Below, piece by piece: positions 505-64,000 of a stretch of 64,000 nt of DNA (position 1 is its first letter; each line of letters begins with the position of its first letter). Made by a program: the position numbers and the translations under genes. Below the pieces are notes generated by a model. That model saw only the letters and a program-made list of their open reading frames with translations, was not told the DNA's origin and searched no databases. The DNA comes from Asterias rubens (Eukaryota): NCBI RefSeq assembly GCF_902459465.1, contig NC_047067.1, forward strand, positions 7,750,001 through 7,814,000, given 5' to 3'.

Positions 505-792
505 GTTTTGTCGCTATGATGGCCGATGCCTCGCATGGTTCGCTTGCACCGTATGAGTTCATTGCTGTCACTCGGAACTGGTAGTCCGCCTCTGGTTTTA
601 GTCCAACAATCGTGTGGAAGCAGTTGCGACTGGTGACGCAGCGAGCCCATGCCTCGGATTTGCCGTCTCGTTTCTCCACGACGTAACTGGTGATTGTGCT
701 GCCTCCATCGTGGAGAGGCGGTTGCCAGGAGAGACGGACCGTGTCAGAAGTCACGTCTAAGACCTCAAGATTTCGAGGAGGATCAGGATGTC
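505..792 (-). CDS. exon E83, Fn3
   Basis: 288 nt, phase 1-1, RHPDPPRNL...IATK, donor C|GTGAGT. Confidence 0.9.
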
Positions 793-3623: not shown

Positions 3624-3709
<86 letters not shown>

Positions 3710-21700: not shown

Positions 21701-24700
21701 CGTTTCTCTACGACGTAGTGAGTGATTCTGCTCCCTCCGTCTTCCGACGACGGATTCCAGGAGAGTGTTATACAGGTCTTGTCCATGTCACATGTTTCTA
21801 TTGGACCGCGAGGTGGGCCTGGACGATCAAGAACCTTTGAGGTGGGGTGAAATTCAAAGAAAATATTGTTATTTACCAAAGTCCTTAGATAGTTTTCTAA
21901 TCAGAAAGCAGTCAAGTCTAAAGTCTCAAGTCTGAAACTGATCAGATATTTTGAAAATTTAACCTAAGATTCTGCCTGTTGGAAATTTCTCATATCTGCA
22001 TCAGTCACCCCCTATTTTGTTGTTATAAATTTTGCAAAAACGAGTATACTCACTTGCACACGAATCATTGCGGTCTCGCTTCCAGCCGAATTGCTAACAG
22101 TGAGTTTGTACGCTCCTTCGTCTGCCTTTACGCAGTTCTTGGCAGTCAAGACGGTCTCACGATCTGTGGTCTCAATCTTAACCCTTGTAGAGGACACCAG
22201 TGTCACGCCATCTTTGTCCCATTTGACCGTTGGTTTTGGCTTGGCTTTGTAGGGCACGTCCAGATGGAATGTGGTACCGGCGCGGACGGTCAGTGTCTCA
22301 CGGTATTTGTTCAGATCAAGCTTTGGAGGTACTGTGAAGTAATTGAGATTCATAGTAAAAGTTATTTTAGACCCACTCCTACAAAATGACAGGAAAATAC
22401 TGCTTGAGAAATATTTTTGATGAGCAAAAAATTGAGTGGAGCACCAGCCACAACAATGCAAAATTCATGTAATTCTGGCTGAAACCTGTGCTTAGCAATT
22501 TTTTTTGTGCTTAAAGGCTTTATGAAACTGGGCCCAGGCCATTAACTTTGTTGTGAATTTGAACAGCTAAATCTATTTTCCCATCTTCGACTAACAGTCA
22601 ACTTCGGCGGATAAGCTAACATTTAAGTTCTCATTTCTTGCACATTTAGCCTTGTTCTGAATTGATTGAGTTTTTACCCCAAACTGATGCATAAAAACAC
22701 CAGATACAAAGTACATTGTAAGTTGTGTGACACAGGCAACAATTTCACATGTTAAATCACTTTTTTGTACATAAAAAAACCCTGTTTCGAAACTTTTGAT
22801 TGACTCTTACCAGCGACACCCTTAGTATCGGTAGCACCGCTAGGCTTGCCCGGTCCAGCTTCGTTGACGGCGCACACTCTGTACTGATACGCAGCACCCT
22901 CCGGAATATCTCTCACGACAAAAGTGCAACCGGAGATTGGTTCCTTGGTGATCGGGGTCCAGCGTGAGGTATAGCGATCGGAACGCTCAATGATGTAACC
23001 GGTGATCGGGTTACCTCCATCGCTACTCGGTGGAGTCCAAGAGAGGTTGAGTGTCGTTCTAGTCACATCTGAGATCTCGGGAGAACCTGGGGCACCAGGT
23101 GCGTCTGTTCAAAAGAAAAAACATCAGTAAAAATGTGTTGGGATTGAGTAATTTTTTGTGGGACAAAAACATGACTTGAACCTGCAACCCCACTACCTGT
23201 GCTCTATCAACTGGGCAATGTTACATCAATAAAACTCAGCCTCCTACTACAACGGCCGGGAGTACTTCTCTCGGAGAGTAGGGAGTCCCACGAGTGTGGA
23301 ACACTGACCCTAGACAAAAACTAGCTTTTCTACCACGGACGGGAGTACTGCTCCCGGAGGGAGTCCCACGGAGGTGAGACGCTAGTTAATTTATATATCG
23401 TAATTAATTAAATTAAGGAAGACACGGAGACACAACAATAATATATATACACTTGGAAAATAAGGTAAGGGGATGTATTCGATCCCCGAGAACCCTGAGT
23501 GCTACTCGCGCTCGGGTCTCAACAGAATTCAGAATATATATCTTAGCAAATCATGCAATAATTCTCAAGAATTCGGGGATAAGTGTAACAGAAAACACGT
23601 CTCGGGCTCTTCCAAAACGTCACTCGAAATGACTGAAACTCTACTAATGAACTGGTTGTAATCTTATAGGAATAAAGCGAACGTACAAGTACTCTAGCTA
23701 AAGCAAGAGGGTGGAAAAACTCACGTCTACCACGTACGGTCGCTAGAAAAAGAAGGACGTATTTGGCGGAGCTACTGCGTAGCATGCTGGGTGGGCGCGA
23801 GAGGGCGCCCTCTGGTTGTCAATTTTTCTAGCGAATTAGCCTGTCGGCTATGAAATATGCATAAGTAGTGGCTATTTGGGTAAGTGAATGAAATAGACTT
23901 AACATGTTCACAAATTAAACATACTTAAACTAGCGAACAACAATTTTGTCAATCCCCAAACAACTCCCTTTACAGAAACATTGAACCCAAACCCCCCTTA
24001 TTATTTGGTTCCTCCCAAATTACAAAAGCTTTAAATCACATTTTATCTGTAGACCTTAACCAGAATTTTCTCACAAGCCATCATTCGGAATATTCAGTAA
24101 CCTACCACAAATCTAAGAACTTACCATATGGAGCCTTGGCAAACACTGGTTTACAGGGCTCGCTCGGCGGTCCCACTCCGGCCTTATTCTCAGCGCTCAC
24201 TCTAAACTCATACTGACTACCCTCTCGCAAACTGGTCACTGTGTACTCAAGTTCGTGGCTCGAGTGAGAGGTGACTCGGCTCCATTTGAAGCCAAATGCT
24301 TCTCGCTTCTCGAGGTGGTAGCTGGTGATCTTACTCCCTCCATCTGAGAGTGGAGGGGACCATGAGAGTGAGACCGAGGACCTTGAGGTGTCGGTGACGA
24401 TAGGTGCGGCAGGCTTGTCAGGAGTATCTGTCATTTTTGAGAACACACACAATATACATACATTCAGTCGACCCTTCTACTGCCTTACCATTCAATATAA
24501 CGTGCTTTTGAATGACAGAAAGACTATGCCAGACTGCAAGATGATATCAAGTAGTAAATGTTATTTACCCATATACTATCATTTGTAATTTTTAATGGCA
24601 AATTAAAGAAAGTATGAGGGTGAATCATATTATTCTTTAACAATCCTCTGGTTTTCTAAAACATTGATTATGTGAAAATGTATATCAATTGTAAAATTAT

Positions 24701-54700: not shown

Positions 54701-57700
54701 TCCACATCCTTAGTGAGATCCTTGACTTCGAACGATGTCTCCTTGATGGTTCCTCTAGTCACCTTCACCCAACGGTCCTTTGCTGTGTCTCTCTTCTCCA
54801 AGATGTATCCCGTTATTGGACTGCCACCAGTGCTCTCCGGTGGTGACCAAGTCACAAAGGCAGCCTTATCGTCGATCTTCTCCACCAGCGGAGCATCTGG
54901 CGCTCCTGGTGGTTGGATTTTCAGAGCCACTGTCTGGCTTGGTTTGCTTGGGCCTGCCTTGTTGATAGCAGTTATGTGGAATGAAGACTCGGCGCCTTCC
55001 TTGAGAGACTTGACTTTGTAGGATAACTCTTTGATGGGCTCAGAAGTGATTTGATTCCACCTTGGGGAGAAGGCATCCTTTTGGTTTACATTGTAGCCGA
55101 TGATTGGAGAGCCACCATCAGAGAATGGAACACTCCAGGTAAGCTCAATGGATGTTGGTGAAAGCTGAGTAAGTTTGACATCCTCAGGTGGTGCTGGAAC
55201 ATCTGTTTGAAAAAAAAAGATGAAAAAAAACCATAAGTCACCAGTCCAGAGTTCTATGCTTGCAATTACAGGTGCAAAATCTCAGGTTCTAAACTTAAAA
55301 GGGTAAAAGAGAAGCAACACAGCACATTCATACACATGTATATCCACATGAGGTCGGAACAAACCCCAGTTCAATTGATTTCATTATAAAATCTACAAAT
55401 CATGTTTTACCATAAGGCACTTTGGCAGTAAGAGGCGTTGATGGTTCCGATGGTTTTCCAATGCCAGCCAAATTCTCAGCACTGACTCTGAACTGATACT
55501 CTGATGCTGTCTTCAAACCAGTGACAGTGCTCTCAACCTCTACCATCTTGGTCTCCAGGACCCTTGTCCAGGTTCGTGCAAAGCTCTCGCGTTGCTCAAT
55601 GATGTAGGAGGTAATGGCACTGCCTCCGTCTGATCGAGGAGGAGTCCATTTGAGGAGGATAGAGGTCCCTGAGACGTTTGTTGGTTCTGGCTTTCCTGGT
55701 GCATCTGGGACATCTATCAAATTGTTTAAATAAAATAAAAATTGTTTTAATACATTATAATCACAAATACAGTGATGATAATTGTTTGATATTAGCCATT
55801 CAACAACTTTTCATAAGGCATTACAATCAACAATAATATTTTCAAAATGTCCACACCAAAAGTACGACAAAGATGAAAATGGACGATGAATAACTTCACA
55901 AATTGGATAAAGGATGAAAGCAATTAGTATTTGATAAGAATGAAGCCTTTTTGTAAAAATGTTTAATTAATGAGGCATGGTTTTCTTTGTTTCACACTAA
56001 ATTTTTTGTTAGGAAAAAACCCCTGGAGAGTCACCTTTTTGGTGCCAAAGAGAAAAGCAAATGAATTAATGAATTAAAAATAAAACCTATTTACCATATG
56101 GGGGTTTAGCTTCAGTAGCATCTGTAGGTGTGCTTGGTTTCCCTGTCCCTGCCTTGTTCTGAGCGCTGACCCTGAACTCATACTTTGACCCTTTGGTCAA
56201 ACCAGTGACCCTGAATGTCAATTCAGTGATGGCATCTGATGATGTCTTGACCCAGCGTTTACTTGTGATATCCCGTTTCTCTAGAATGTAACCCGTAACA
56301 GGGCTACCACCATCCGACTCCGGAGAAGACCAGGATATGGTCATAGAGTCAGCTGTGATGTCAGAGATGGTGGTCTGCTCTGGGGCTCCTGGGACATCTT
56401 AAAACAGAAGAAAACAAGATTTGTTAAGAATATTGGCTCCTTTATAATAAAACAAATGAGAAAGTTCTTTGTCCCAAAAAATACAAAAAAACGGCTGCAA
56501 TCTCTGGGCCTCCTGTGCCATCTTAAAACAGAAGAAAACAAGTTTTTTAACCTATGTTGGCTCCTTTACAATAATGCAAATTTAAAATGTTTTCAAATTT
56601 GAAAAGCTGCATTAAGAAAAACACTAATTGAATGGATTGACTTCTATCAGATTGGTACAAAAACGCTTGAAGAAAGTTTTAGCTCAGACTGTTGAAACAT
56701 TTTCAAAAACGTCAAAACAAACTAAAAACAAAGTTTCTGTCTTTCTAGTCTGCTCACCATATTTAGATTTGGCGATCCATGCTTTGGAGACATCACTTGG
56801 CTTCCCAAGTCCAGCCTTGTTCTCGGCGGTGACCCTAAACTCGTACTGAGTTCCCTCATTCAGGTCCTTCACCTTGAAGGTGGTTTCTGTGATGCTTTCT
56901 CGGGAGACCTTGACCCAGCGTGTTGAGCTGGTGTCTCTCATCTCAAGAATGTAACCAGTGATTGGGCTGCCGCCATCAGACTCTGGGGGTGACCATGTGA
57001 CTGTCATGTGACTAACATCGACATCTGTGACTGTGGGCGCTGATGGTCTTTCAGGAACATCTAATGACAGACATCAAGTATGATGGGTGGTTTATTCAAA
57101 TATAAAAAAGAACACGATTTATTTTGTTTTTGGAGGGGGTTGAGCAAATTGTGTTACTGTTTTGAATGTCAGTTCCTCTCAACTGAGAAAATATGTTTAC
57201 GTTGTTGGTCAAGTTTTATGGTAAAAAAAAGAAAAAACACTTAAAGATTCAAGAGGAATTTTGTGCATGTTCACATTGAGCTAGTTAGATTAGAGCACTC
57301 TAAACAGCAAGGGTGGTTTATGTGGGTCTTCACATTTTAGCTTCTTGATTTTGACATTCTTAAAATGGAAACAATTCACTAAAGGATTGGTAGATTGATG
57401 ACTCGGATTTAATAAGTGAGCTACCCGAATGAAATGAATTGCTTTTTTTCTTCAAATATTACCAAAGTTGTACTTTATCTTTAATAAATTATTTAAGGTT
57501 TGGTTGAATAAAGAAATAATTACTCAAGCTGGATTTTACCACCAGAAACGTGCCATGGCTCTACCAACTGAGCCAGAGACATTATTTAGACGACTTACCA
57601 TAAGGATGCTTAGCAGTCACAAAGGAGCAAGCATCGCCTGGCTGACCGGTTCCCCGTATATTCTCAGCAGTAACTCTAAACTGGTAGTCCTCGCCTTCTT

Positions 57701-60700: not shown

Positions 60701-63700
60701 CTTACTGGGTGACCCAGGTACATCTGTAAGAAAATTTTAACAAATTTTCATTAAATATCAAGAATGTTTAGTCTTACACAATTATAAATAAGAAATATAC
60801 TCATTTATGGAAAAGAGTAATGATGACAGAAGGTCTAAAACTATGTTCAAAATTTTAATCTAAGGAGTCAACTCTGAATTCCGATTAAAGTCTGGATTTT
60901 CTCATCTCTATTTGAAACGTAGAAACTCTTCTTTGGCCTGATGTTACTTAAGTATGCAAAATCTAAGTCTTGTTTAATGACCCCTTGCAGTCAAAAAAGT
61001 CAACAACGCAAAGTGCCCCTCTATCAATTCCATCCTTTTTGGAGGTCAATTCCTTTGTGCACATTTTGACACCTATAATAGGTGACACCAATGTGCTTAA
61101 AGAAGTAGTACTAAAAGAAGATTCATTCCAATTAACTTTAAACACTTTAAAGGGGATGAAAAACAAAGTTTTTCACAAAGGTAAACAGTTTGAACTCACC
61201 ATAAGGTGGTTTAGTAATCCTTGGCTTGGATGGTTCACTGAATGGACTATTTCCAGCCTTGTTGACTGCAGCCACACGGAACTCATACTCCTTGCCTTCA
61301 ATCAGATCTTTCACGGTCAGTTCAGTCTCACTAACTGTGTCTCTAACAGCCTTTGTCCATCTTGTGGAAGACGTCTCTTTTCTTTCAACGATGTAGCCAG
61401 TGACTGGACTACCACCATCAGATTTTGGAGGTGACCACGAGATGGTAATCTGGGTTCTGTCAACAGCTGTGACTTCAGGCTTGCTTGGCGCTTCAGGTAC
61501 GTCTTAAATATCAAATAAATTTTTGTTAAATTGGTCATGACCAAAATCAGAGTAGTTGCATTGTCAATTTGGGTAGTAGAAAGTGTCTGGGGTAATTCAT
61601 ACATTGTAAGCAGTGGTGTTGACCAACGAAACAGGGAAACAGGGGTGATTTTGAGTGCATCCACACACTACTATTTTTTAAATTATTTTTTGTGGGGGGG
61701 GGTACCTCTTTTCACAAAGACTATTAATGATCTTCAAGTTAATGAATACGAAAGAAAATTGCACATTGCTGATACGACATTTTGATTTTGTGACACTCAC
61801 CATAAAGAGGTTTGGTGATCTTTGGCTCAGATGGTTCACTGAATGGACCCGTCCCAGCCTTGTTGACTGCCGCCACACGGAACTCATACTCCTTGCCTTC
61901 AATCAGATCTCTCACAGTCAGTGTTGTCTTAGTGACCGAATCTTTTACAGCCTTTGTCCATCTCGTTGAAGAGGTTTCCTTCTTTTCAATAACATAGCCT
62001 GATACTGGATTTCCACCATCAGATTCAGGTGGTGACCAGGAGATTGTAATATTAGTTCTGTCAACACCTGTGATATCAGGCTTACCTGGGGCACCAGGAA
62101 CATCTGAGAGTGGAAGCCAAACCAGAAAATTTGTGTAAATTGTCTTTAAAGTTAAAGCATTTGATAAGAATTGATTAGATTTGATACAAACAAAATAGCA
62201 AAAGTGAAAAAAATTATAAACAAACTGACCATATGGTGGTTTGGTGACTCTAGGTTCAGATGGTTCACTGAATGGACCTGTTCCAGCCTTGTTGATTGCA
62301 GCCACATGGAACACATACTCTTTGCCTTCAATTAAATCGTTGACGACAAGAGAAGTCTCTGTGACCGAGTCCCTGTGAGCCTTTGCCCATCTTGTTGAGG
62401 TAGTCTCTTTCTTCTCAATGATGTAGCCTTTTATTGGACTGCCTCCATCTGATTCTGGGGCTGACCATGATATGGTGATCTGGGTTCTGTCAACAGCTGT
62501 TACTTCAGGCTTGCCAGGAGCGTTAGGCACATCTAGAAATTACAAAAAGATGTTGAAATGTGACTGAACTTGAAGTTTAAACATATGATTAAAAGACTGT
62601 AATAATTGAATGTTACAGGTAGGAAAAGAGGATGTTACTACACATAAGGACTTACCATAAGGAGGTTTGGTAATTCTAGGCTCAGATGGTTCACTGAATG
62701 GACCTGTCCCAGCCTTGTTGACTGCAGCCACACGGAACTCATACTCCTTGCCTTCAATCAGATCTTTCACTGTCAGTGTTGTGTCAGAAACTGAGTCTCT
62801 AACTGCCTTTGTCCATCTCGTGGAAGACGTCTCTTTCTTCTCAATGATGTAACCAGTTACTGGGCTACCACCGTCCGACTCAGGGGGAGACCATGAAATG
62901 GTTATCTGTTTACTATCAACAGCTGAGACTTCAGGCTTGCTTGGTGCTTTGGGAACATCTGGTTTAAGTTAAGTAAAAAATGTATAATAATTAGAAACAA
63001 TCTTTAAAAACAATTAGTATGATTATAGTCAATCGCCACAAAACAATTTCTAAGATGTATATATGCAACATATTTAAACTCACCATATGGAGGTTTGGTT
63101 ATTGTAGGCTCAGATGGTTCACTGAATGGACCTGTTCCGGCTTTGTTTACAGCAGCTACACGGAACTCATACTTGCTGCCCTCGATCAGATCTCTCACAG
63201 TCAATGTAGTCTCACTGACTGAATCTTTGACAGCTTTTGTCCATCTTGTTGAGGTAGTCTCTTTCTTTTCAATGAGGTAGCCTTTAATTGGACTGCCACC
63301 ATCGGACTTAGGTGGAGTCCATGAGATAGTGATCTGGGTTCGATCGATGGCTGTGACTTCTGGTTTGCCTGGTGCCTCAGGAACATCTGGAAGTTAAAGG
63401 ATAAAAATTATTTTTAAAATCATGATACAATATGAAATTCCTTAACTTGAATTTTTAGAAGCTTTAAGATAAACAAATTAACAAATAAATAACCAAGACC
63501 ATCAGAATCTTTTAAAACAGATATTCACTATTAAATAAGGTGTAACAAGTACCGTATGGAGGTTTGGCAATTCTTGGCTCAGATGGTTCACTGAATGGAC
63601 CTGTTCCTGCCTTGTTGATTGCAGCCACATGGAACTCATACTCCTTGCCCTCAATCAAATCCTTTACAACAAGAGAAGTCTCTGTAACCGAGTCTCTGTA

Positions 63701-64000
63701 AGCTTTTGCCCATCTTGTTGAGGTGGTCTCTTTCTTTTCAATGATGTAGCCAGTAATTGGACTGCCACCATCGGACTCAGGAGGTGACCATGATAGGGTG
63801 ATCTGTTTGCTGTCAACAGCTGTCACATCAGGCTTTCCAGGGGCTTCAGGAACATCTTTAAGAAAAAAGAAGAACATTCAAGATGGATAAGTGTATCTAT
63901 AAAGGCTTTTCCCATAAAACAACACTCATTACAAAGGAGTTACAACAATTGTAAAAATACAAGACTTAAAGGATTAGCTCACCATATGGTGGTTTAGTGA
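505..64000 (-). CDS. Giant titin/twitchin-family muscle protein gene (partial; 83 exons, 73 complete Fn3 + 10 Ig domains; open at both window edges)
   Basis: Exons joined at GT-AG sites give one uninterrupted frame of about 8,270 aa. It has titin-type intracellular Fn3 motifs (P..P....V......L.W.PP..DGGS.I.GY.(I/V)EK(K/R)....W......Y.V..L.EG..YEFRV.AEN.AG...PS) and I-set Ig motifs (G.P.P...W......D.G.Y...A.N..G). Family call is from motif recognition; orthology to vertebrate TTN is not established. Confidence 0.95.
1088..1246. mobile_element. MITE, CCAGGG...TTTCACAAAG-type ends
   Basis: Imperfect inverted termini ccagggctcaatgttacaaagagcta / tagtgctttgtgaaactgtccccctgg; related to elements at 6375 and 19236. 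Confidence 0.5.
1416..1703 (-). CDS. exon E82, Ig
   Basis: 288 nt, phase 1-1, VAPKVNV...INIL. Confidence 0.9.
2046..2330 (-). CDS. exon E81, Ig
   Basis: 285 nt, phase 1-1, GSIPATFV...VKLQ. Confidence 0.9.
2358..2470 (-). mobile_element. SINE/LINE 3' tail fragment with (TTA)n end
   Basis: Minus strand reads aagcgctttgagatgccctttgggtgtgtaaagagctatataaaaaccatttattattatt, similar to the tails at 25340 and at the L2 3' end. Confidence 0.5.
2666..2968 (-). CDS. exon E80, Fn3
   Basis: 303 nt, phase 1-1, DVPTAPGKP...VKDPR. Confidence 0.9.
3243..3625 (-). repeat. Two direct copies (3243-3325, 3543-3625) of an ~83-bp tRNA-SINE head fragment
   Basis: ttaagga..ttttcaaga.taggactc(a/g)aacccacactctgctgatcagaaacaccagagcttgagcca(t/c)ggcactcaa occurs twice; reverse complement carries a B-box-like GGGTTCGAGTCC; homologous to SINE heads at 25560-25655 and 38810-38903. 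Confidence 0.8.
3330..3521. mobile_element. MITE, 192 bp, ~26-bp TIR
   Basis: ATAGACCGATCCACTAAGCTCCGCCC versus reverse complement of right end ATAGATCGATCCAGTAGGCTCCGCCC (23/26); 2-bp TSD TA (or AT, ambiguous because the ends are palindromic). Confidence 0.85.
3626..4389 (-). mobile_element. 5'-truncated L2/CR1-group LINE (RT C-terminal region, 3' UTR, (TTA)n tail)
   Basis: ORF 3774-4361 has the L2-type motifs LVHAFVTTRLDFCNSLL, HITPVL..L.WLPV, RSFSYA.P.LWNSLP and LKTH; tail = (TAA)n at 3626-3705 on +; flanked by CACTCAA at 3619-3625 and 4390-4396. Confidence 0.9.
4438..4601 (-). CDS. exon E79, Fn3 C-terminal part
   Basis: 164 nt, phase 2-1, RTIWQNAG...AKAPY; with E78 totals 303 nt; missed by the ORF track. 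Confidence 0.88.
5093..5231 (-). CDS. exon E78, Fn3 N-terminal part
   Basis: 139 nt, phase 1-2, DKPGPPLGP...REPN; missed by the ORF track. Confidence 0.88.
5715..6005 (-). CDS. exon E77, Ig
   Basis: 291 nt, phase 1-1, SLPSLDL...VKVV. Confidence 0.9.
6141..6292. mobile_element. MITE, A(T/A)GGGAGACTTT TIR family
   Basis: atgggagacttt ... aaagtctcccttt; second copy at 34377-34524 shares the TIR and tatgtctgctgcc. Confidence 0.65.
6375..6618. mobile_element. Foldback MITE, ~48-bp TIR (GGGCCCAATTTCATAGAGCTGCT...)
   Basis: Left gggcccaatttcatagagctgcttagcacaaaaatttgcttagcatga matches the reverse complement of 6568-6615; extra internal inverted repeat aaacaggattaccaaccaaatttcc / ggaaatttggttggcaatcctgtttt. 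Confidence 0.85.
6997..7172 (-). CDS. exon E76, Ig C-terminal part
   Basis: 176 nt, phase 2-1, (W)VRKGHEL...LHIK. Confidence 0.88.
7936..8047 (-). CDS. exon E75, Ig N-terminal part
   Basis: 112 nt, phase 1-2, PGVAPTFTQ...FTCRVTGTPAPQVV(W); missed by the ORF track. Confidence 0.88.
8033..8580. repeat. Local tandem duplication, ~299-bp offset, including the E75 acceptor
   Basis: ttggtgcaactccagct.aaagtc.aaat...tataaggtttt...aaactttaacaa...aaattgaggttcttttag at 8033 and 8332; similarity continues with indels to about 8290/8580. Confidence 0.8.
8604..8903 (-). CDS. exon E74, Fn3
   Basis: 300 nt, phase 1-1, RRPSPPGIP...ARDVL. Confidence 0.9.
9515..9820 (-). CDS. exon E73, Fn3
   Basis: 306 nt, phase 1-1, SVPSAPGKP...AKDPA. 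Confidence 0.9.
10384..10686 (-). CDS. exon E72, Fn3
   Basis: 303 nt, phase 1-1, DVPGPPTGP...CKSLY. Confidence 0.9.
10991..11050. repeat. 30-bp tandem duplication
   Basis: aagtgacacttacaggaat(ta/ga)(t/c)atttgatt twice. Confidence 0.8.
11172..11456 (-). CDS. exon E71, Ig
   Basis: 285 nt, phase 1-1, SEPKIDL...VIVV. Confidence 0.88.
11851..12114 (-). CDS. exon E70, Ig (short, divergent type)
   Basis: 264 nt, phase 1-1, EMAEFTEP...KYSCRCG...VKVK. Confidence 0.88.
12303..12443. mobile_element. Degenerate MITE of the ATAGAC/ATTGACC-end family
   Basis: atagacacttgca... left end and ...tacaaggggtcttt right end; resembles the ends at 17544. Confidence 0.4.
12522..12716. repeat. Local direct duplication, ~115-bp offset
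   Basis: ttcaactt(g)agaagtattttcaag.aaataac.gtacaaaatattagtaa...atgatcag.gc occurs twice. Confidence 0.75.
12763..13065 (-). CDS. exon E69, Fn3
   Basis: 303 nt, phase 1-1, DVPEAPGTP...AKTPI. Confidence 0.9.
13568..13873 (-). CDS. exon E68, Fn3
   Basis: 306 nt, phase 1-1, DKPSPPEGP...VKSPF. Confidence 0.9.
14072..14362 (-). CDS. exon E67, Ig
   Basis: 291 nt, phase 1-1, AAPKLEL...VSVL. Confidence 0.9.
14887..15186 (-). CDS. exon E66, Fn3
   Basis: 300 nt, phase 1-1, EVPGQPGP...VERPA. Confidence 0.9.
15805..16072 (-). CDS. exon E65, Fn3 (lacks first residues, which are in E64)
   Basis: 268 nt, phase 0-1, VVRLGSN...PKGDY. Confidence 0.88.
16794..17113 (-). CDS. exon E64, Ig plus start of Fn3
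   Basis: 320 nt, phase 1-0, VPPKLEL...VVDRPSPPEGPLQ. Confidence 0.88.
17544..17766. mobile_element. GC-rich MITE-like element
   Basis: Imperfect inverted ends attgaccccttgcacgcgcgtca / tgacgtcaggtgaaatgggtcatt; CpG-rich interior in an AT-rich intron. Confidence 0.45.
17809..17923 (-). CDS. exon E63, Fn3 C-terminal part
   Basis: 115 nt, phase 0-1, VGRLLRG...AENPP; with E62 totals 303 nt; missed by the ORF track. Confidence 0.88.
18613..18800 (-). CDS. exon E62, Fn3 N-terminal part
   Basis: 188 nt, phase 1-0, VVPDAPDAP...TTFK. Confidence 0.88.
19236..19386. mobile_element. MITE, GAGGTCGATTTCACAAAGA ends
   Basis: gaggtcgatttcacaaaga ... tctttgtcaaatccactc imperfect TIR. Confidence 0.6.
19423..19596. 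mobile_element. PIF/Harbinger-type MITE
   Basis: TIR AGCCCGGTTCATACTTCCTG / CAGGAAGTACGAACCGGGCT; TTA on both flanks (3-bp TTA/TAA TSD is typical of PIF/Harbinger). Confidence 0.85.
19636..20217 (-). CDS. exon E61, Ig + Fn3
   Basis: 582 nt, phase 1-1, VLPKLGE...PKGQY. Confidence 0.9.
20418..20720 (-). CDS. exon E60, Fn3
   Basis: 303 nt, phase 1-1, DVPGPPSTP...AQEAS. Confidence 0.9.
21072..21370. mobile_element. MITE with bipartite inverted ends
   Basis: atttttgaccgcg...gcgct and atcacttccgggggta on the left are mirrored by tacccccggaagtgat...agcgccatcacgcggtcaaaaat on the right. Confidence 0.75.
21525..21834 (-). CDS. exon E59, last Ig residues + Fn3
   Basis: 310 nt, phase 0-1, VLDRPGPP...IKSKY. 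Confidence 0.88.
22054..22331 (-). CDS. exon E58, Ig (first Ig after the poly-Fn3 array)
   Basis: 278 nt, phase 1-0, VPPKLDL...IRVQ. Confidence 0.88.
22811..23104 (-). CDS. exon E57, Fn3 (last of the poly-Fn3 array)
   Basis: 294 nt, phase 1-1, DAPGAPGSP...TKGVA. Confidence 0.9.
24125..24427 (-). CDS. exon E56, Fn3
   Basis: 303 nt, phase 1-1, DTPDKPAAP...AKAPY. Confidence 0.9.
24988..25290 (-). CDS. exon E55, Fn3
   Basis: 303 nt, phase 1-1, DVPGPPGAP...AKPPY. Confidence 0.9.
25340..25655 (-). mobile_element. Near full-length tRNA-derived SINE
   Basis: Minus strand: A-box-like TGGCCTAGAGG, B-box GGGTTCGAATCCC, body gacacttgtgtccttgagcaa, tail aatgtaaagcggattgagaagttattgtgaaatgcgc. Confidence 0.75.
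25811..26107 (-). CDS. exon E54, Fn3
   Basis: 297 nt, phase 1-1, GVPGVPTSP...AKPPY. Confidence 0.9.
26479..26781 (-). CDS. exon E53, Fn3
   Basis: 303 nt, phase 1-1, (N)VPDSPEDV...IRPPF. Confidence 0.9.
26955..27140 (-). mobile_element. tRNA-derived SINE, second family
   Basis: Minus strand: GGTTTGAATCCC B-box-like, then gcgtgggctttccctgg...gggttttcctcccacatct, a core common in aquatic-animal SINEs. Confidence 0.6.
27250..27552 (-). CDS. exon E52, Fn3
   Basis: 303 nt, phase 1-1, DVPEAPGKP...AKPPY. Confidence 0.9.
28233..28535 (-). CDS. exon E51, Fn3
   Basis: 303 nt, phase 1-1, DVPDAPSSP...ARAPY; weak donor GTTTGT. Confidence 0.88.
28572..28737. mobile_element. MITE, CCAGGGGTCAATTTCAT family (degenerate)
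   Basis: ccaggggtcaatttcat ... tataaaattgggcac; related to 6375 and 46432. Confidence 0.55.
28973..29114 (-). CDS. exon E50, Fn3 C-terminal part
   Basis: 142 nt, phase 0-1, VNADATSH...AKAPY; with E49 totals 303 nt; missed by the ORF track. Confidence 0.88.
29486..29646 (-). CDS. exon E49, Fn3 N-terminal part
   Basis: 161 nt, phase 1-0, DVPGSPDAP...WTKLDE; missed by the ORF track. Confidence 0.88.
30100..30245 (-). mobile_element. Degenerate SINE fragment, same family as 25340
   Basis: caggtaccaattta...tgttgctcaagga...caagtgtcatgactgggatt shared with 25507-25590. Confidence 0.6.
30346..30645 (-). CDS. exon E48, Fn3
   Basis: 300 nt, phase 1-1, DAPDAPGVP...AKPPY. Confidence 0.9.
30964..31148. 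mobile_element. PIF/Harbinger-type MITE, second copy, opposite orientation to 19423
   Basis: Same TIR AGCCCGGTTCATACTTCCTG; interior is the reverse complement of the 19423 copy; ends 13 bp from the E47 donor. Confidence 0.85.
31162..31464 (-). CDS. exon E47, Fn3
   Basis: 303 nt, phase 1-1, (N)IPGAPSQP...AKAPY. Confidence 0.9.
31820..31980 (+). mobile_element. tRNA-derived SINE, third family (further fragments at ~42105-42230 and ~44635-44710)
   Basis: gtcgtgggttcgaatctcacc B-box, then tttttcacagaactcgggaaag...acatcgg...aaaattaatat, repeated at the other two loci. Confidence 0.65.
32053..32355 (-). CDS. exon E46, Fn3
   Basis: 303 nt, phase 1-1, DAPDAPGVP...AKPPY. Confidence 0.9.
32746..33048 (-). 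CDS. exon E45, Fn3
   Basis: 303 nt, phase 1-1, DVPGAPRAP...AKAPY. Confidence 0.9.
33454..33756 (-). CDS. exon E44, Fn3
   Basis: 303 nt, phase 1-1, ESPSAPTIP...AKAPY. Confidence 0.9.
34018..34320 (-). CDS. exon E43, Fn3
   Basis: 303 nt, phase 1-1, GVPGAPSTP...AKPPY. Confidence 0.9.
34377..34524. mobile_element. Foldback MITE, AATGGGAGACTTTC TIR
   Basis: aatgggagactttc / gaaagtctcctatt plus internal inverted repeat taccgggtaaat.ccattgtt / aacaatggaaatttacccggta. Confidence 0.8.
35025..35327 (-). CDS. exon E42, Fn3
   Basis: 303 nt, phase 1-1, DTPGAPSKP...AKSPY. Confidence 0.9.
35483..35529 (-). ncRNA. Minimal hammerhead-ribozyme-like motif (Penelope-like element terminal repeat), variant core
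   Basis: Minus strand GGCUCUC CCGAAGA C GAGCAG AGAAUA CUGUUU GAA ACGU C GAGACC; matches the CUGANGA-stemII-GAAA-UH layout except U4 to C. Confidence 0.45.
35695..35997 (-). CDS. exon E41, Fn3
   Basis: 303 nt, phase 1-1, DVPSQPGTP...AKPPY. Confidence 0.9.
36500..36802 (-). CDS. exon E40, Fn3
   Basis: 303 nt, phase 1-1, DVPEAPGQP...AKAQY. Confidence 0.9.
36865..37047. mobile_element. Tc1/mariner-pogo-type MITE
   Basis: TA|CAGTCGGCTCTCGTTTTAA ... TTAAAATAAGAGTCGACTG|TA; TIR about 19 bp with TA TSD. Confidence 0.8.
37261..37557 (-). CDS. exon E39, Fn3
   Basis: 297 nt, phase 1-1, VAPDAPSVP...VRPPY. Confidence 0.9.
38023..38322 (-). CDS. exon E38, Fn3
   Basis: 300 nt, phase 1-1, GVPDAPRKP...TKPPY. 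Confidence 0.9.
38400..38530 (-). mobile_element. Penelope-type terminal-repeat fragment with degenerate hammerhead motif (38462-38514)
   Basis: Minus strand CUC CUGAAGA C GAUCA aagcacauac UGAUC GAAA ugc GAG; flank accatgtaa...gtggttctgaaaagg is shared with 48320-48365 and 12220-12285. Confidence 0.45.
38640..38903 (-). mobile_element. tRNA-derived SINE
   Basis: Minus strand: TGGCTGAGCTG A-box-like, GGGTTCCAATCCC B-box-like, gacacttgtgcccttgagcaaggcattaac core. Confidence 0.7.
39031..39181 (-). CDS. exon E37, Fn3 C-terminal part
   Basis: 151 nt, phase 0-1, VTRERIS...PKKPY; with E36 totals 303 nt. Confidence 0.88.
39237..39508 (+). repeat. G-rich minisatellite, ~31-bp unit, 8-9 degenerate copies
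   Basis: Consensus GGGGAAAGGAAACCCAGTTGGGTACAGGA(N)1-2; units start at 39390, 39421, 39452 and 39483. Confidence 0.85.
39568..39719 (-). CDS. exon E36, Fn3 N-terminal part
   Basis: 152 nt, phase 1-0, DVPDAPSRP...SRWTQ. Confidence 0.88.
40096..40392 (-). CDS. exon E35, short Fn3
   Basis: 297 nt, phase 1-1, ETPESPSPP...AKDAY. Confidence 0.9.
41043..41633 (-). CDS. exon E34, double Fn3
   Basis: 591 nt, phase 1-1, DVSEAPGTP...IKPPY. Confidence 0.9.
41656..42035. mobile_element. Unclassified interspersed element (probable non-autonomous DNA transposon)
   Basis: Weak inverted ends ttcattcataaatac / gtatttatgagtgggaa; GC-richer interior with two gattggtc/attggtc motifs. Confidence 0.35.
42429..42731 (-). 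CDS. exon E33, Fn3
   Basis: 303 nt, phase 1-1, DKPDAPGQP...AKPPY. Confidence 0.9.
42754..43128. repeat. Local direct duplication (~125-140 bp) split by a SINE-tail fragment
   Basis: tttgatgagattg.gaa...attcttgaat...tgttgg.acatccc...gactc.aacaa...tttgttgcatttttgtca at 42754 and 42989; (AAT)n-tailed fragment at ~42880-42985 lies between. Confidence 0.7.
43293..43595 (-). CDS. exon E32, Fn3
   Basis: 303 nt, phase 1-1, GIPSAPGTP...AKLPY. Confidence 0.9.
43925..44039 (-). CDS. exon E31, Fn3 C-terminal part
   Basis: 115 nt, phase 0-1, VTSLTEG...AKHPY; with E30 totals 303 nt. Confidence 0.88.
44361..44548 (-). CDS. exon E30, Fn3 N-terminal part
   Basis: 188 nt, phase 1-0, DVPGIPGTP...NLIYK. Confidence 0.88.
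44879..45166. mobile_element. Kolobok-type MITE, 288 bp
   Basis: TTAA|AGACACTTGACACTATTGGTAATT ... AATTACCAATAGTGTCCACTGCCT|TTAA; TTAA TSD with RR ends. An isolated right end of the same family is at 3522-3546. Confidence 0.8.
45295..45597 (-). CDS. exon E29, Fn3
   Basis: 303 nt, phase 1-1, DVPDAPDAP...AKQPY. Confidence 0.9.
45942..46247 (-). CDS. exon E28, Fn3
   Basis: 306 nt, phase 1-1, DVPDAPGKP...IKPAY. Confidence 0.9.
46432..46616. mobile_element. MITE, CAGGGCCCAATTTCATA family
   Basis: cagggcccaatttcataaagc ... gctttgtgaaattgggcacag; partial right ends also at ~22486-22538 and ~33265-33316. Confidence 0.7.
46971..47042 (-). pseudogene. Dead partial copy of the 3' end of exon E27
   Basis: cataaggaggtttggcaacaatggatctagaggactgactaggttta...tctaaactcatactca matches 47161-47253 with an internal deletion; the donor reads G|ATAG instead of G|GTAAG. 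Confidence 0.8.
47161..47463 (-). CDS. exon E27, Fn3
   Basis: 303 nt, phase 1-1, DVPSSPGAP...AKPPY; coding frame missed by the ORF track. Confidence 0.9.
47902..48204 (-). CDS. exon E26, Fn3
   Basis: 303 nt, phase 1-1, DVPDAPGSP...AKRPY. Confidence 0.9.
48282..48523. mobile_element. Foldback element with ~95-bp inverted arms around a hammerhead-like core
   Basis: Left arm gaagaaaccataaataaacagtaaacttgcgggtacaaccatgtgtaaatctcttttgt... pairs with right arm ...acaaaagagatttacacatggttgtacctgcaactttactaattatttatagtttcttc; core at 48371-48415. Confidence 0.8.
48612..48908 (-). CDS. exon E25, short Fn3
   Basis: 297 nt, phase 1-1, DTPESPSKP...AKEPY. Confidence 0.9.
49044..49634 (-). CDS. exon E24, double Fn3
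   Basis: 591 nt, phase 1-1, DVPDVPGTP...AKLPY. Confidence 0.9.
50071..50364 (-). CDS. exon E23, short Fn3
   Basis: 294 nt, phase 1-1, DVPKSPSTP...AKEPY. Confidence 0.9.
50627..51217 (-). CDS. exon E22, double Fn3
   Basis: 591 nt, phase 1-1, VVPDAPGTP...AKLPY. Confidence 0.9.
51469..51762 (-). CDS. exon E21, short Fn3
   Basis: 294 nt, phase 1-1, DIPLSPSRP...AKEPY. Confidence 0.9.
51983..52573 (-). CDS. exon E20, double Fn3
   Basis: 591 nt, phase 1-1, DVPDAPGTP...AKLPY; donor GTGTGT. Confidence 0.88.
52884..53180 (-). CDS. exon E19, short Fn3 (protein-identical to E17)
   Basis: 297 nt, phase 1-1, DVPDAPNKP...AKLPY. Confidence 0.9.
53322..53912 (-). CDS. exon E18, double Fn3
   Basis: 591 nt, phase 1-1, DVPASPTNL...AKLPY. 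Confidence 0.9.
54120..54416 (-). CDS. exon E17, short Fn3
   Basis: 297 nt, phase 1-1, DVPDAPNKP...AKLPY. Confidence 0.9.
54612..55202 (-). CDS. exon E16, double Fn3
   Basis: 591 nt, phase 1-1, DVPAPPEDV...AKLPY; the ORF track shows only the second domain. Confidence 0.9.
55411..55713 (-). CDS. exon E15, Fn3
   Basis: 303 nt, phase 1-1, DVPDAPGKP...AKVPY. Confidence 0.9.
56095..56397 (-). CDS. exon E14, Fn3
   Basis: 303 nt, phase 1-1, DVPGAPEQT...AKPPY. Confidence 0.9.
56379..56581. repeat. ~80-bp direct duplication containing the E14 acceptor
   Basis: tctggg(g/c)ctcctg.g.catcttaaaacagaagaaaacaag.ttt.ttaa...ttggctccttta.aataa..caaat at 56379 and 56503. Confidence 0.8.
56758..57060 (-). CDS. 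exon E13, Fn3
   Basis: 303 nt, phase 1-1, DVPERPSAP...AKSKY. Confidence 0.9.
57530..57575 (-). mobile_element. tRNA-like SINE head fragment (a similar one is at ~23172-23218)
   Basis: Minus strand TGGCTCAGTTGGTAGAGC A-box; no complete cloverleaf. Confidence 0.45.
57599..57901 (-). CDS. exon E12, Fn3
   Basis: 303 nt, phase 1-1, DVPSSPSAP...AKHPY. Confidence 0.9.
58511..58813 (-). CDS. exon E11, Fn3
   Basis: 303 nt, phase 1-1, DEPDSPSIP...AKSPF. Confidence 0.9.
59134..59436 (-). CDS. exon E10, Fn3
   Basis: 303 nt, phase 1-1, DVPEAPNSP...AKLPF; missed by the ORF track. Confidence 0.9.
59826..60131 (-). CDS. exon E9, Fn3
   Basis: 306 nt, phase 1-1, DAPGAPGIP...AKPPY. Confidence 0.9.
60421..60723 (-). 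CDS. exon E8, Fn3
   Basis: 303 nt, phase 1-1, DVPGSPSKP...AKPPY. Confidence 0.9.
61200..61502 (-). CDS. exon E7, Fn3
   Basis: 303 nt, phase 1-1, DVPEAPSKP...TKPPY; coding frame missed by the ORF track. Confidence 0.9.
61801..62103 (-). CDS. exon E6, Fn3
   Basis: 303 nt, phase 1-1, DVPGAPGKP...TKPLY. Confidence 0.9.
62230..62532 (-). CDS. exon E5, Fn3
   Basis: 303 nt, phase 1-1, DVPNAPGKP...TKPPY; the ORF track reads through the 126-nt E5/E6 intron. Confidence 0.88.
62656..62958 (-). CDS. exon E4, Fn3
   Basis: 303 nt, phase 1-1, DVPKAPSKP...TKPPY. Confidence 0.9.
63084..63386 (-). CDS. exon E3, Fn3
   Basis: 303 nt, phase 1-1, DVPEAPGKP...TKPPY. Confidence 0.9.
63553..63855 (-). CDS. exon E2, Fn3
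   Basis: 303 nt, phase 1-1, DVPEAPGKP...AKPPY. Confidence 0.9.
63983..64000 (-). CDS. exon E1 (3' end only), Fn3
   Basis: ...ACT AAA CCA CCA TAT G|GTGAG (TKPPY), same ending as neighbouring exons; cut by the window edge. Confidence 0.8.

What the first reader, a model, noticed from the sequence alone, without database searches (positions are those of the whole stretch)
22811..64000. At least 59 consecutive Fn3 domains with no Ig: a poly-Fn3 filament in a titin-family protein
Seen: exons E2-E57 splice in frame into 17,724 nt (5,908 aa) of 59 complete titin-type Fn3 domains, plus part of a 60th at the window edge. None of the intervening exons encodes an Ig, and I found no Ig-coding sequence in these introns. 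Established: vertebrate titin A-band super-repeats (7- and 11-domain) and twitchin/projectin (Fn-Fn-Ig) break Fn3 runs with an Ig every 2-3 domains; the longest titin run I recall is about six at the I/A junction. Inference: this is an unusual giant-sarcomere-protein architecture in which the presumed myosin-binding region became pure Fn3 by exon amplification, and the array continues past 64000. I cannot tell whether it is already in databases as an unremarked titin-like model.
Basis: partly seen in the sequence, partly recalled or inferred. Interest (0 to 1): 0.9.

Follow-up and report, generated by a model that had tools for sequence, protein, structure and literature searches.

The report
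Sea-star titin with 59+ consecutive Fn3 domains
A sea star's version of the giant muscle protein titin really does contain at least 59 fibronectin-type domains in a row with no immunoglobulin domain between them; the stretch is expressed and conserved, and it sits unremarked in gene predictions for related animals.

Summary
On the minus strand, 56 GT-AG, phase-1 exons (22811-63855) splice into 17,718 nt (5,906 aa, no stop). They encode 59 complete Fn3 domains packed end to end, and a 60th is cut by the window edge. No Ig-coding sequence was found between them on either strand.

- **Expression:** spliced RNA contigs join the six tested exon junctions exactly as predicted. They also link the last Fn3 to the first Ig exon.
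- **Conservation:** another sea star, Patiria miniata, has the same exon structure. F7-F59 have one-to-one counterparts there, and dN/dS over F20-F59 is 0.08.
- **Family:** downstream lies (Ig-Fn-Fn)x4 and the FFF-II-FF-II-F cassette that precedes the kinase in twitchin/titin. A tree of that cassette groups the gene with amphioxus and fish titin, apart from echinoderm "twitchin".

The architecture is not unique. Fragmentary public models show long Ig-free runs:
- Patiria: 25+, 13 and 40 Fn3.
- Saccoglossus: 19, 31, 19 and 18 Fn3.
- Molluscs: 36-43 Fn3.

I found no paper describing this. Two other notes of this scan already cover parts of this same stretch.

Verdict: a real, new variant of the titin family, shared by echinoderms and an acorn worm. 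Thick-filament binding is inferred, not shown.

The parts
63983..64000 (-). 3' end of a 60th Fn3 exon, cut by the window edge ('..TKPPYG' followed by a gt donor)
   Evidence: Translation of the window edge.
22811..63855 (-). Ig-free Fn3 array: 56 exons, 59 Fn3 domains (F1-F59), 17,718 nt spliced, 5,906 aa, about 642 kDa, pI 5.5
   Evidence: HMM scan; splice model; domains abut with no linker; mass and pI.
61200..63855 (-). F1-F6: block of similar units (78-88% aa identity, about 80% nt identity), four of the five introns within the block only 123-166 nt. The intron at 62104-62229 stays in frame with no stop.
   Evidence: The same unit type forms at least 19 nearly identical copies in Patiria P0288.
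48612..55202 (-). F15-F29: three-domain super-repeat, [591-nt two-domain exon + 294-297-nt one-domain exon] x5. A sixth, displaced copy lies at 40096-41633.
   Evidence: Exon table; identity at lag 3 is 70% against 48% at lags 1-2; same layout in Patiria.
52884..54416 (-). Exons 54120-54416 and 52884-53180 (F17 and F20) are 99.3% identical in DNA while their flanking introns are 42-53% identical: gene conversion limited to the exon
22052..22331 (-). First Ig (I-set) exon after the array, spliced directly to the last Fn3 exon
   Evidence: Pfam I-set E 2e-17. The 22331|22811 joint appears in three RNA runs.
12761..22331 (-). (Ig-Fn-Fn) x4, the twitchin/projectin-type repeat. Domains with a counterpart in Saccoglossus titin-like P0004 run collinear with it; P0004 ends before the Fn3 at 12761.
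506..12088 (-). Ig + Ig-FFF-II-FF-II-F: the pre-kinase cassette of titin/twitchin, with one extra Ig at 11843-12088. The kinase would lie beyond position 1.
   Evidence: cassette tree.

Best explanation
This is the central segment of the sea-star counterpart of chordate titin.

Inferred layout of the whole protein:
- An N-terminal spring of Ig domains and PEVK-like sequence, seen in a Patiria model on the same contig.
- An uninterrupted rod of about 60-80 Fn3 domains.
- Four Ig-Fn-Fn repeats.
- The Ig-Ig-Fn cassette that precedes the kinase in titin and twitchin.

Shown:
- The array grew by duplication of single phase-1 exons and of a three-domain block.
- Part of it is kept uniform by gene conversion.
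- Every domain compared with Patiria (F20-F59) is under strong purifying selection.
- The array is spliced consecutively in RNA.

Inferred: by its position in the protein, its close similarity to titin A-band Fn3 domains, and its linker-free proline-rich joints, the array most likely lies along the myosin (thick) filament as a stiff scaffold. Unlike chordate titin it lacks the Ig-punctuated 7- and 11-domain periodicity.
For: Architecture and expression:
- 59 Fn3, no Ig, and an open 5,906-aa splice model.
- RNA contigs of three runs join 22331|22811, 23104|24125, 24427|24988, 25290|25811, 26104|26479 and 26781|27250, all GT..AG on the minus strand. One 4,040-nt contig spans the Ig exon plus six Fn3 exons. 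Another, of 4,202 nt, has a further about 2.8 kb beyond the laid stretch that was not checked.
- RNA runs also hold 17-23% of the sampled words of 40000-46000, where exons are 36% of the bases.

Conservation:
- Patiria titin-like P0151 (Pfam: 40 fn3 + 1 I-set) aligns collinearly with F20-F59 at 80.5% identity.
- The Patiria locus has the same two-domain and split exons.
- F7-F59 have one-to-one counterparts.
- dN 0.115, dS 1.47, ratio 0.08; 0.04-0.14 in the 37 of 40 domains where dS could be estimated.

Family:
- The downstream domains run collinear with Saccoglossus titin-like P0004.
- The last Fn3 best matches the Fn3 just before the kinase in twitchins.
- In the cassette tree the window groups with amphioxus titin-like and Tetraodon titin (100/99). 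An AU test rejects grouping it with echinoderm twitchins (p 0.0002).

Function (indirect):
- The closest solved chains are titin C-zone segments in cardiac thick-filament cryo-EM entries 8q6t and 8g4l (E 1e-150).
- Patiria P0288 has PEVK-like spacers between Ig pairs upstream of 25 Fn3.
- Saccoglossus and Diadema array units are as similar to the window's units (48-50% mean) as the window's units are to each other.
Against: - No protein-level, tissue or localisation data exist; thick-filament binding is inferred from position and homology only.
- The kinase and the N-terminal part lie outside the window.
- In the cassette tree the window, amphioxus and fish rows are the longest branches in their clade, so long-branch attraction is possible. 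The AU group was also chosen after seeing the tree.
- RNA junctions were tested over only 6 kb, and phase-1 symmetric exons can be skipped without breaking the frame.
- Sea-star muscle is mostly not cross-striated (my recollection), so a vertebrate-like A-band role may not transfer.
Confidence: 0.6

Rival explanations
1. The array is an extensible or spacing element, not a thick-filament-bound rod. On this reading it is a chain of Fn3 domains that straightens or unfolds under load, or simply sets a distance, as tandem-Ig segments do in the titin I-band.
For: - The units outside F15-F29 show no super-repeat that could match a filament periodicity; identity is flat at 50-52% for lags 1-12 in F30-F59.
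- Array length varies among lineages: at least 78 in Patiria and up to 87 in Saccoglossus if its models are one gene. A tuned spring or spacer would be expected to vary like this.
- The array directly follows the Ig/PEVK-like part in Patiria P0288.
Against: - The nearest solved relatives are titin A-band Fn3 domains that lie on the myosin filament.
- Joints are linker-free and proline-rich, as in titin's A-band.
- A separate PEVK-like spring already exists upstream.
- Uniform purifying selection fits either model.
Confidence: 0.25
2. Most array exons are cassette exons, so mature proteins carry far fewer than 59 consecutive Fn3.
For: All exons are phase 1-1 and multiples of 3, so any can be skipped in frame. 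Only about 6 kb was checked against RNA. Titin's I-band exons behave this way in vertebrates (established knowledge).
Against: - No skipping joint was seen between Fn3 exons among the best-supported joints (29 others were not shown). Every adjacent pair tested is joined in two to four runs.
- The Patiria RefSeq model P0151 includes all 40 domains.
- Each domain where the ratio could be estimated has dN/dS of 0.04-0.14.
Confidence: 0.1
3. The run is an assembly or annotation artefact, such as collapsed or mis-joined repeats or a separate Fn3-only gene.
For: The Patiria and Saccoglossus models are fragmented, and one is flagged partial. The F1-F6 type block is repetitive.
Against: - Units average only 50% identity, so they are unique sequence.
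- An independent assembly of another species has the same 53 domains in the same order with the same exon structure.
- RNA contigs join the array to the Ig exon.
Confidence: 0.02

Closest known systems
Chordate titin/connectin A-band segment (D-zone 7-domain and C-zone 11-domain super-repeats)
   Same: - Same Fn3 type: best PDB matches are titin C-zone chains 8q6t and 8g4l.
- Same position between an Ig/PEVK-like spring and the FFF-II-FF-II-F pre-kinase cassette.
- The cassette groups with amphioxus and fish titin.
- One domain per phase-1 exon.
   Different: - No Ig for at least 59 domains, whereas amphioxus, Ciona and fish titin models examined here have an Ig every 2-3 Fn3 (longest run 3-7).
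- No 7- or 11-domain periodicity; only a local three-domain repeat.
Twitchin (UNC-22) / projectin, and the echinoderm 'twitchin' genes of about 5,000 aa
   Same: The 3' part of the window has the Ig-Fn-Fn repeat and the same pre-kinase cassette.
   Different: - Echinoderm twitchins (S. purpuratus, Lytechinus, Diadema, Apostichopus, crinoids) read I12-FFFIFFIFFIFFFIFFIFFFIIFFIIF-kinase, with no long Fn3 run.
- They are not the best match of the window's domains and form a separate clade.
Unremarked public models: Patiria miniata titin-like (P0151, P0288), Saccoglossus kowalevskii titin-like (P0159, P0152, P0158, P0004), Diadema setosum twitchin-like (P0194)
   Same: - Same gene family and the same array-type Fn3.
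- Patiria: 80% identical with the same exons.
- Saccoglossus and Diadema units are 48-50% identical on average to the window's units, the same as within the window.
- The Ig-run to Fn3 array to Ig-Fn-Fn order is shared.
   Different: - They are fragments of one gene split by automatic annotation, and none is described in the literature I could search.
- Between sea star and acorn worm the individual units have no one-to-one counterparts.
Other long Fn3 runs in titin/twitchin-like models: Ptychodera flava twitchin-like (15 Fn3), molluscs (Plakobranchus 41, Pinctada 43, Haliotis 38, Elysia 36), annelids and Lingula (13-14)
   Same: These are Ig-free Fn3 runs inside Ig/Fn3 giant proteins. Elysia and the Ptychodera locus also carry the kinase.
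   Different: - Their units are no closer to the window's units (35-41% mean) than ordinary twitchin or titin Fn3 are.
- The Ptychodera cassette falls in the twitchin clade.
- They are probably independent expansions.
Extracellular Fn3 polymers (tenascin-X, usherin, fibronectin), recalled from memory
   Same: Long uninterrupted Fn3 runs.
   Different: The window's array is spliced to I-set domains and a pre-kinase cassette of an intracellular muscle protein. Its best matches are titin, MyBP-C and myomesin rather than matrix proteins.

Membership tests
Titin/twitchin family of giant Ig-Fn3 muscle proteins | Tandem I-set Ig and muscle-type Fn3 domains, about 100 aa each, joined without long linkers | tested here: met
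   Pfam fn3 and I-set; own HMMs; best PDB matches are titin, MyBP-C, myomesin and twitchin.
Titin/twitchin family of giant Ig-Fn3 muscle proteins | Conserved FFF-II-FF-II-F cassette immediately before the kinase | tested here: met
   Present at 506-10687. The last Fn3 best matches the Fn3 directly before the kinase motif in five twitchin-like proteins with a kinase motif (only the Limulus one is named).
Titin/twitchin family of giant Ig-Fn3 muscle proteins | Autoinhibited Ser/Thr kinase domain near the C-terminus | not testable with these tools
   It would lie beyond position 1 of the window. The 5,079-aa Patiria model downstream of P0151 runs off the fetched locus and could not be retrieved.
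Titin/twitchin family of giant Ig-Fn3 muscle proteins | Fn3 runs interrupted by an Ig every 2-3 domains (Fn-Fn-Ig, or 7- and 11-domain super-repeats) | tested here: not met
   Not met over 22811-64000: 59 Fn3 and no Ig. Met only in 12761-22331, as (Ig-Fn-Fn)x4.
Chordate titin (orthology) | Groups with chordate titin rather than twitchin in phylogeny | tested here: met
   Pre-kinase cassette, 26 taxa, LG+C20: window + (amphioxus + Tetraodon titin) 100/99; AU p 0.0002 against the alternative. Caveats: long branches, and only one region analysed. A shorter II-F tree gave no resolution.
Chordate titin (orthology) | N-terminal elastic part with tandem Ig and PEVK-like sequence in the same protein | tested here: inconclusive
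   Outside the window. Patiria P0288, on the same contig as P0151, has five spacers of about 268-392 aa plus one of 90 aa, all rich in E, V, P and K, between Ig groups, then 7 Ig and 25 Fn3.
Chordate titin (orthology) | Sarcomeric location spanning I-band to M-band, bound to thick filaments in the A-band | not testable with these tools
   Needs microscopy and biochemistry.
Extracellular Fn3 matrix proteins (tenascin/usherin type) | Fn3 run combined with EGF, laminin or fibrinogen domains and a secretion signal | tested here: not met
   The array is spliced to I-set domains and the pre-kinase cassette. Pfam finds only fn3-type families and I-set in P0151. A signal peptide could not be examined because the N-terminus is outside the window.

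The most novel reading that the evidence does not exclude
The titin of the last common ancestor of echinoderms and hemichordates, and perhaps of all deuterostomes, had an Ig-free Fn3 polymer as its thick-filament segment. On this reading the Ig-punctuated 7- and 11-domain super-repeats of chordate titin are a later invention. Array length (about 60-90 units, roughly 4 nm each) would then act as a freely adjustable ruler or coat for the long, non-vertebrate-type thick filaments of these animals, so unit number should track thick-filament length between species and muscles.
Probability: 0.2. Interest if true: 0.75.

Novelty: new variant of a known kind. Interest (0 to 1): 0.55.

Why it matters
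Ideas about how titin measures and organises the thick filament rest on the vertebrate 7- and 11-domain Ig/Fn3 super-repeats. Here a member of the titin clade, in the sister group of chordates, replaces that pattern with a uniform Fn3 rod of 60-80 or more units. The rod is conserved, expressed and under selection.

This gives a natural experiment on whether the Ig positions and the super-repeat are needed for thick-filament association. It also gives an outgroup for dating the origin of the super-repeats. On the practical side, it shows that current annotations cut this gene into three or more 'titin-like' pieces, so ortholog counts for titin in echinoderms and hemichordates are unreliable. 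Finally, long Fn3 runs appear to have arisen several times in this family (sea stars and acorn worm, Ptychodera twitchin, molluscs), which suggests a recurrent functional demand.

Tried and rejected
- **Tandem repeats:** Tandem Repeats Finder on 48000-64000 found nothing at score 200 or above. The units are too diverged at DNA level, so the repeat structure had to be read from protein identities.
- **RNA families:** Rfam on the whole window gave no match, so the intronic high-depth RNA signals are not known RNA families.
- **Short tree:** a tree of only the last Ig-Ig-Fn (286 columns), meant to place the mollusc poly-Fn3 proteins, gave no resolution. My kinase-motif filter also dropped 15 of 29 taxa. 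I draw nothing from it.
- **Patiria P0288:** its genomic position could not be looked up because it is over 5,000 aa.
- **Unit orthology:** one-to-one matching of array units between sea star and hemichordates was looked for and not found.
- **Hidden periodicity:** no 7- or 11-domain periodicity was found in F30-F59.
- **Literature:** five searches and two papers (PMC12198301, PMC5888912) gave no description of such arrays. PMC5888912 only counts titin orthologues in ambulacrarians.
- **Not attempted:** structure prediction, because Pfam and PDB sequence matches already settle the fold.
Full report
**1. What is there**

The window has no N and 40.5% G+C. Most long open frames are on the minus strand, so the gene runs from 64000 towards 1. 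Pfam finds fn3 in sample frames from 22755-63877, and I-set or I-set+fn3 in sample frames from 2011-22464.

I built an Fn3 profile from 43 window exons and an Ig profile from the window's 10 Ig domains. I searched every stop-to-stop frame of at least 20 aa on both strands.
- Between 22811 and 63855 there are 59 complete Fn3 domains (E 1e-34 to 1e-48).
- No Ig hit there is better than E 0.07, and the four weak ones fall inside Fn3 exons.
- Downstream, in transcript order, the pattern is I-FF-I-FF-I-FF-I-FF-II-FFF-II-FF-II-F.

**2. Gene model**

- Every exon has an ag acceptor and a gt donor in phase 1: the G of '..PPYG' is split, and after splicing it gives Asp of 'DVPDAP'.
- Three domains are split by an extra intron, and the best-scoring splice choice is unambiguous.
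- The model has 56 exons, 17,718 nt and 5,906 aa with no stop.
- Domains abut with zero to minus-three residues between profile envelopes.
- The window's first bases encode the end of a 60th domain.
- The array is about 642 kDa, acidic (pI 5.5) and almost free of cysteine. Its consensus is the titin-type Fn3 signature, with invariant W23, P26, Y37, W49, N81 and G84.

**3. Internal structure**

- Mean pairwise identity is 50%.
- F1-F6 are 78-88% identical to one another.
- F15-F29 form a three-domain repeat: identity is 70% at lag 3 against 48% at lags 1-2. It is built from a 591-nt two-domain exon plus a 294-297-nt exon, five times, with a sixth displaced copy.
- F30-F59 show no periodicity up to lag 12.
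- Exons F17 and F20 are 99.3% identical in DNA, while their introns are 42-53% identical.
- These points agree with two other notes of this scan on the same stretch.

**4. Expression**

RNA-type runs hold 17-28% of the sampled words of two 6-kb stretches in which exons make up about 35%. I laid four of them on 22001-28000.
- Spliced contigs join 22331|22811, 23104|24125, 24427|24988, 25290|25811, 26104|26479 and 26781|27250.
- All joints are GT..AG on the minus strand, and all are exactly my predicted junctions.
- One run matches the window almost perfectly. Two others differ by 1-5%, so they come from a close relative or a divergent population.
- A 4,040-nt contig contains the first Ig exon plus six Fn3 exons, and more on both sides.
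- A 4,202-nt contig has a further about 2.8 kb beyond the laid stretch, which was not checked.
- No joint that skips an Fn3 exon was among the best-supported joints; 29 others were not shown.
- So the array is transcribed, spliced consecutively where tested, and is part of the same transcript as the Ig-Fn-Fn region.

**5. Relatives**

An exhaustive profile search with one two-domain exon, followed by local domain mapping, name look-ups and two word-index searches (mapped) gave the following.

| Protein | Species and name | Domain order |
|---|---|---|
| P0151 | Patiria miniata 'titin-like' | 40 Fn3 + 1 Ig (Pfam) |
| P0288 | Patiria miniata 'titin-like, partial' | Ig groups separated by E/V/P/K-rich spacers, then 7 Ig, then 25 Fn3 |
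| P0159 | Saccoglossus kowalevskii 'titin-like' | 27 Ig + 19 Fn3 |
| P0152 | Saccoglossus kowalevskii 'titin-like' | 31 Fn3 |
| P0158 | Saccoglossus kowalevskii 'titin-like' | 19 Fn3 |
| P0004 | Saccoglossus kowalevskii 'titin-like' | 18 Fn3 + IFFIFFIFFIF |
| P0194 | Diadema setosum 'twitchin-like' | 6 Ig + 12 Fn3; the locus shows at least 27 Fn3 in a row |

The four Saccoglossus accessions are nearly consecutive. If they are one gene, the run would be 87 Fn3; I could not verify this.

Chordate titins (amphioxus, Ciona, fishes) and arthropod and nematode twitchins have runs of 2-3. The exceptions are six in one fish titin fragment and seven in two other models.

**6. Orthology and selection**

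- P0151 aligns with array residues 1927-5906 at 80.5% identity, essentially without gaps. The window is therefore from another sea-star species; earlier notes of this scan also call the genome a sea star.
- The Patiria locus has the same two-domain exons and the same three split domains. Automatic annotation cuts the gene there into models of 1,287, 4,098 and 5,079 aa.
- F7-F59 each have a single best counterpart in Patiria, in order.
- Over 3,979 aligned codons dN = 0.115 and dS = 1.47, a ratio of 0.08. The ratio is 0.04-0.14 in the 37 of 40 domains where dS could be estimated.
- Upstream, Patiria P0288 carries at least 19 copies of the F3-like unit at 89-99% identity. The sea-star array is therefore probably close to 80 units.
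- Between sea star and acorn worm no unit-to-unit correspondence remains. Even so, Saccoglossus and Diadema units are as similar to the window's units (48-50% on average) as the window's units are to each other. Ptychodera, mollusc, annelid and brachiopod array units are only as similar as ordinary twitchin or titin Fn3, at 35-41%.

**7. Which family member**

- The window's downstream domains that have a counterpart in Saccoglossus P0004 match it best and in collinear order; echinoderm twitchins are not the best matches.
- Echinoderm twitchins have a conventional layout with no long Fn3 run.
- The last Fn3 matches the one right before the kinase in five twitchin-like proteins (only the Limulus one is named).
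- A maximum-likelihood tree of the ten-domain pre-kinase cassette (26 taxa, site-heterogeneous model) places the window with amphioxus titin-like and Tetraodon titin (100/99).
- The sister clade is Ptychodera P0020 plus echinoderm twitchins (100/99). An AU test rejects a single ambulacrarian clade (p 0.0002).
- Caveats: these three rows are the longest branches of the clade, and the test group was chosen after seeing the tree.
- Ptychodera's own 15-Fn3 run belongs to the twitchin-clade gene, which does carry a kinase motif. Its run is therefore probably an independent expansion.
- Several molluscs also have 36-43 consecutive Fn3 in 'titin' models. Elysia's ends in II-F-kinase.

**8. How it probably works**

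Shown:
- A conserved, expressed, selected, linker-free rod of Fn3 domains.
- In the window it lies immediately upstream of Ig-Fn-Fn repeats and a pre-kinase cassette.
- In the Patiria relative a model on the same contig carries an Ig/PEVK-like part upstream of Fn3 units of the same type; its adjacency to the array is not shown.

Inferred: it lies along the thick filament like titin's A-band part.
- Its closest solved relatives are titin C-zone chains seen on the cardiac myosin filament (8q6t, 8g4l; E 1e-150).
- Its place in the protein is the same as titin's A-band segment.

The lack of Ig and of a long-range super-repeat suggests a uniform coat rather than a patterned ruler. The main rival is an extensible or spacing role. 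Nothing here measures binding, mechanics or location.

**9. Novelty**

The sequences are public but fragmented, and are named only 'titin-like' or 'twitchin-like'. Five full-text searches and two relevant papers gave no description of Ig-free Fn3 arrays in this family.
- Hanashima et al. 2025, PMC12198301, uses Saccoglossus and sea-urchin sequences only in SEC14 and kinase trees.
- Inoue and Satoh 2018, PMC5888912, only counts titin orthologues.

I rate it a new variant of a known kind. It is still a real and unremarked feature of the sister group of chordates.

Noticed in passing
window 25424-25602 (intron); also 27000-27100 and 22401-22600: Very high summed depth in all four RNA runs (4,000-35,000 against about 5-40 on exons), with many contigs carrying loose ends. 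This looks like a highly expressed or highly repeated short element, SINE-like. There is no Rfam match.
   Followed up: partly
window 23236-23885 (intron between the last two Fn3 exons): Unspliced contigs of about 1.1 kb in three RNA runs cover this intronic stretch at depth equal to or above the exons, and continue into sequence not in the window. This is a repeat copy or an independent transcript.
   Followed up: no
window 62104-62229: This 126-nt intron between F4 and F5 has no in-frame stop (open frame 61742-62539). Retaining it would insert 42 residues without breaking the protein.
   Followed up: no
window 3777-4388 and 3524-3814 (minus strand, intron): A 204-aa open frame with no Pfam match. 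From memory it resembles the C-terminal part of a non-LTR retrotransposon protein. Next to it a trinucleotide repeat reads as a long poly-Leu run. Unverified.
   Followed up: no
window 11843-12088: An extra Ig domain stands before the FFF of the pre-kinase cassette (II-FFF instead of I-FFF in twitchins and titins). Its best matches are Ig domains from the N-terminal Ig runs of Diadema P0194 and Saccoglossus P0159.
   Followed up: no
P0288 (Patiria miniata titin-like, partial), residues 101-2651: Five spacers of about 268-392 aa plus one of 90 aa, all rich in E, V, P and K, alternate with Ig groups. Four of them start almost identically, and three of those are 268 aa. This is a PEVK-like spring built from a recently repeated Ig-Ig-spacer unit.
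   Followed up: partly
L002 (Ptychodera flava), about 51197-68500: The twitchin-clade gene of this acorn worm has its own run of exactly 15 similar Fn3 between the Ig run and the Ig-Fn-Fn part. RefSeq splits the gene into P0012 and P0020.
   Followed up: partly
P0286, P0309, P0321, P0354 (Plakobranchus, Pinctada, Haliotis, Elysia): Mollusc 'titin' models carry 36-43 consecutive Fn3 after (FFF-II) repeats. In Elysia the run is followed by FFFF-II-F, a kinase-sized gap of 368 aa (motif not checked) and nine Ig. Their relation to the ambulacrarian array is unresolved.
   Followed up: partly
L001 (Patiria miniata): One giant gene is annotated as at least three adjacent 'titin-like' models (1,287, 4,098 and 5,079 aa), with a fourth (P0288, 6,123 aa, partial) on the same contig. 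Published counts of titin genes in echinoderms may be affected.
   Followed up: partly
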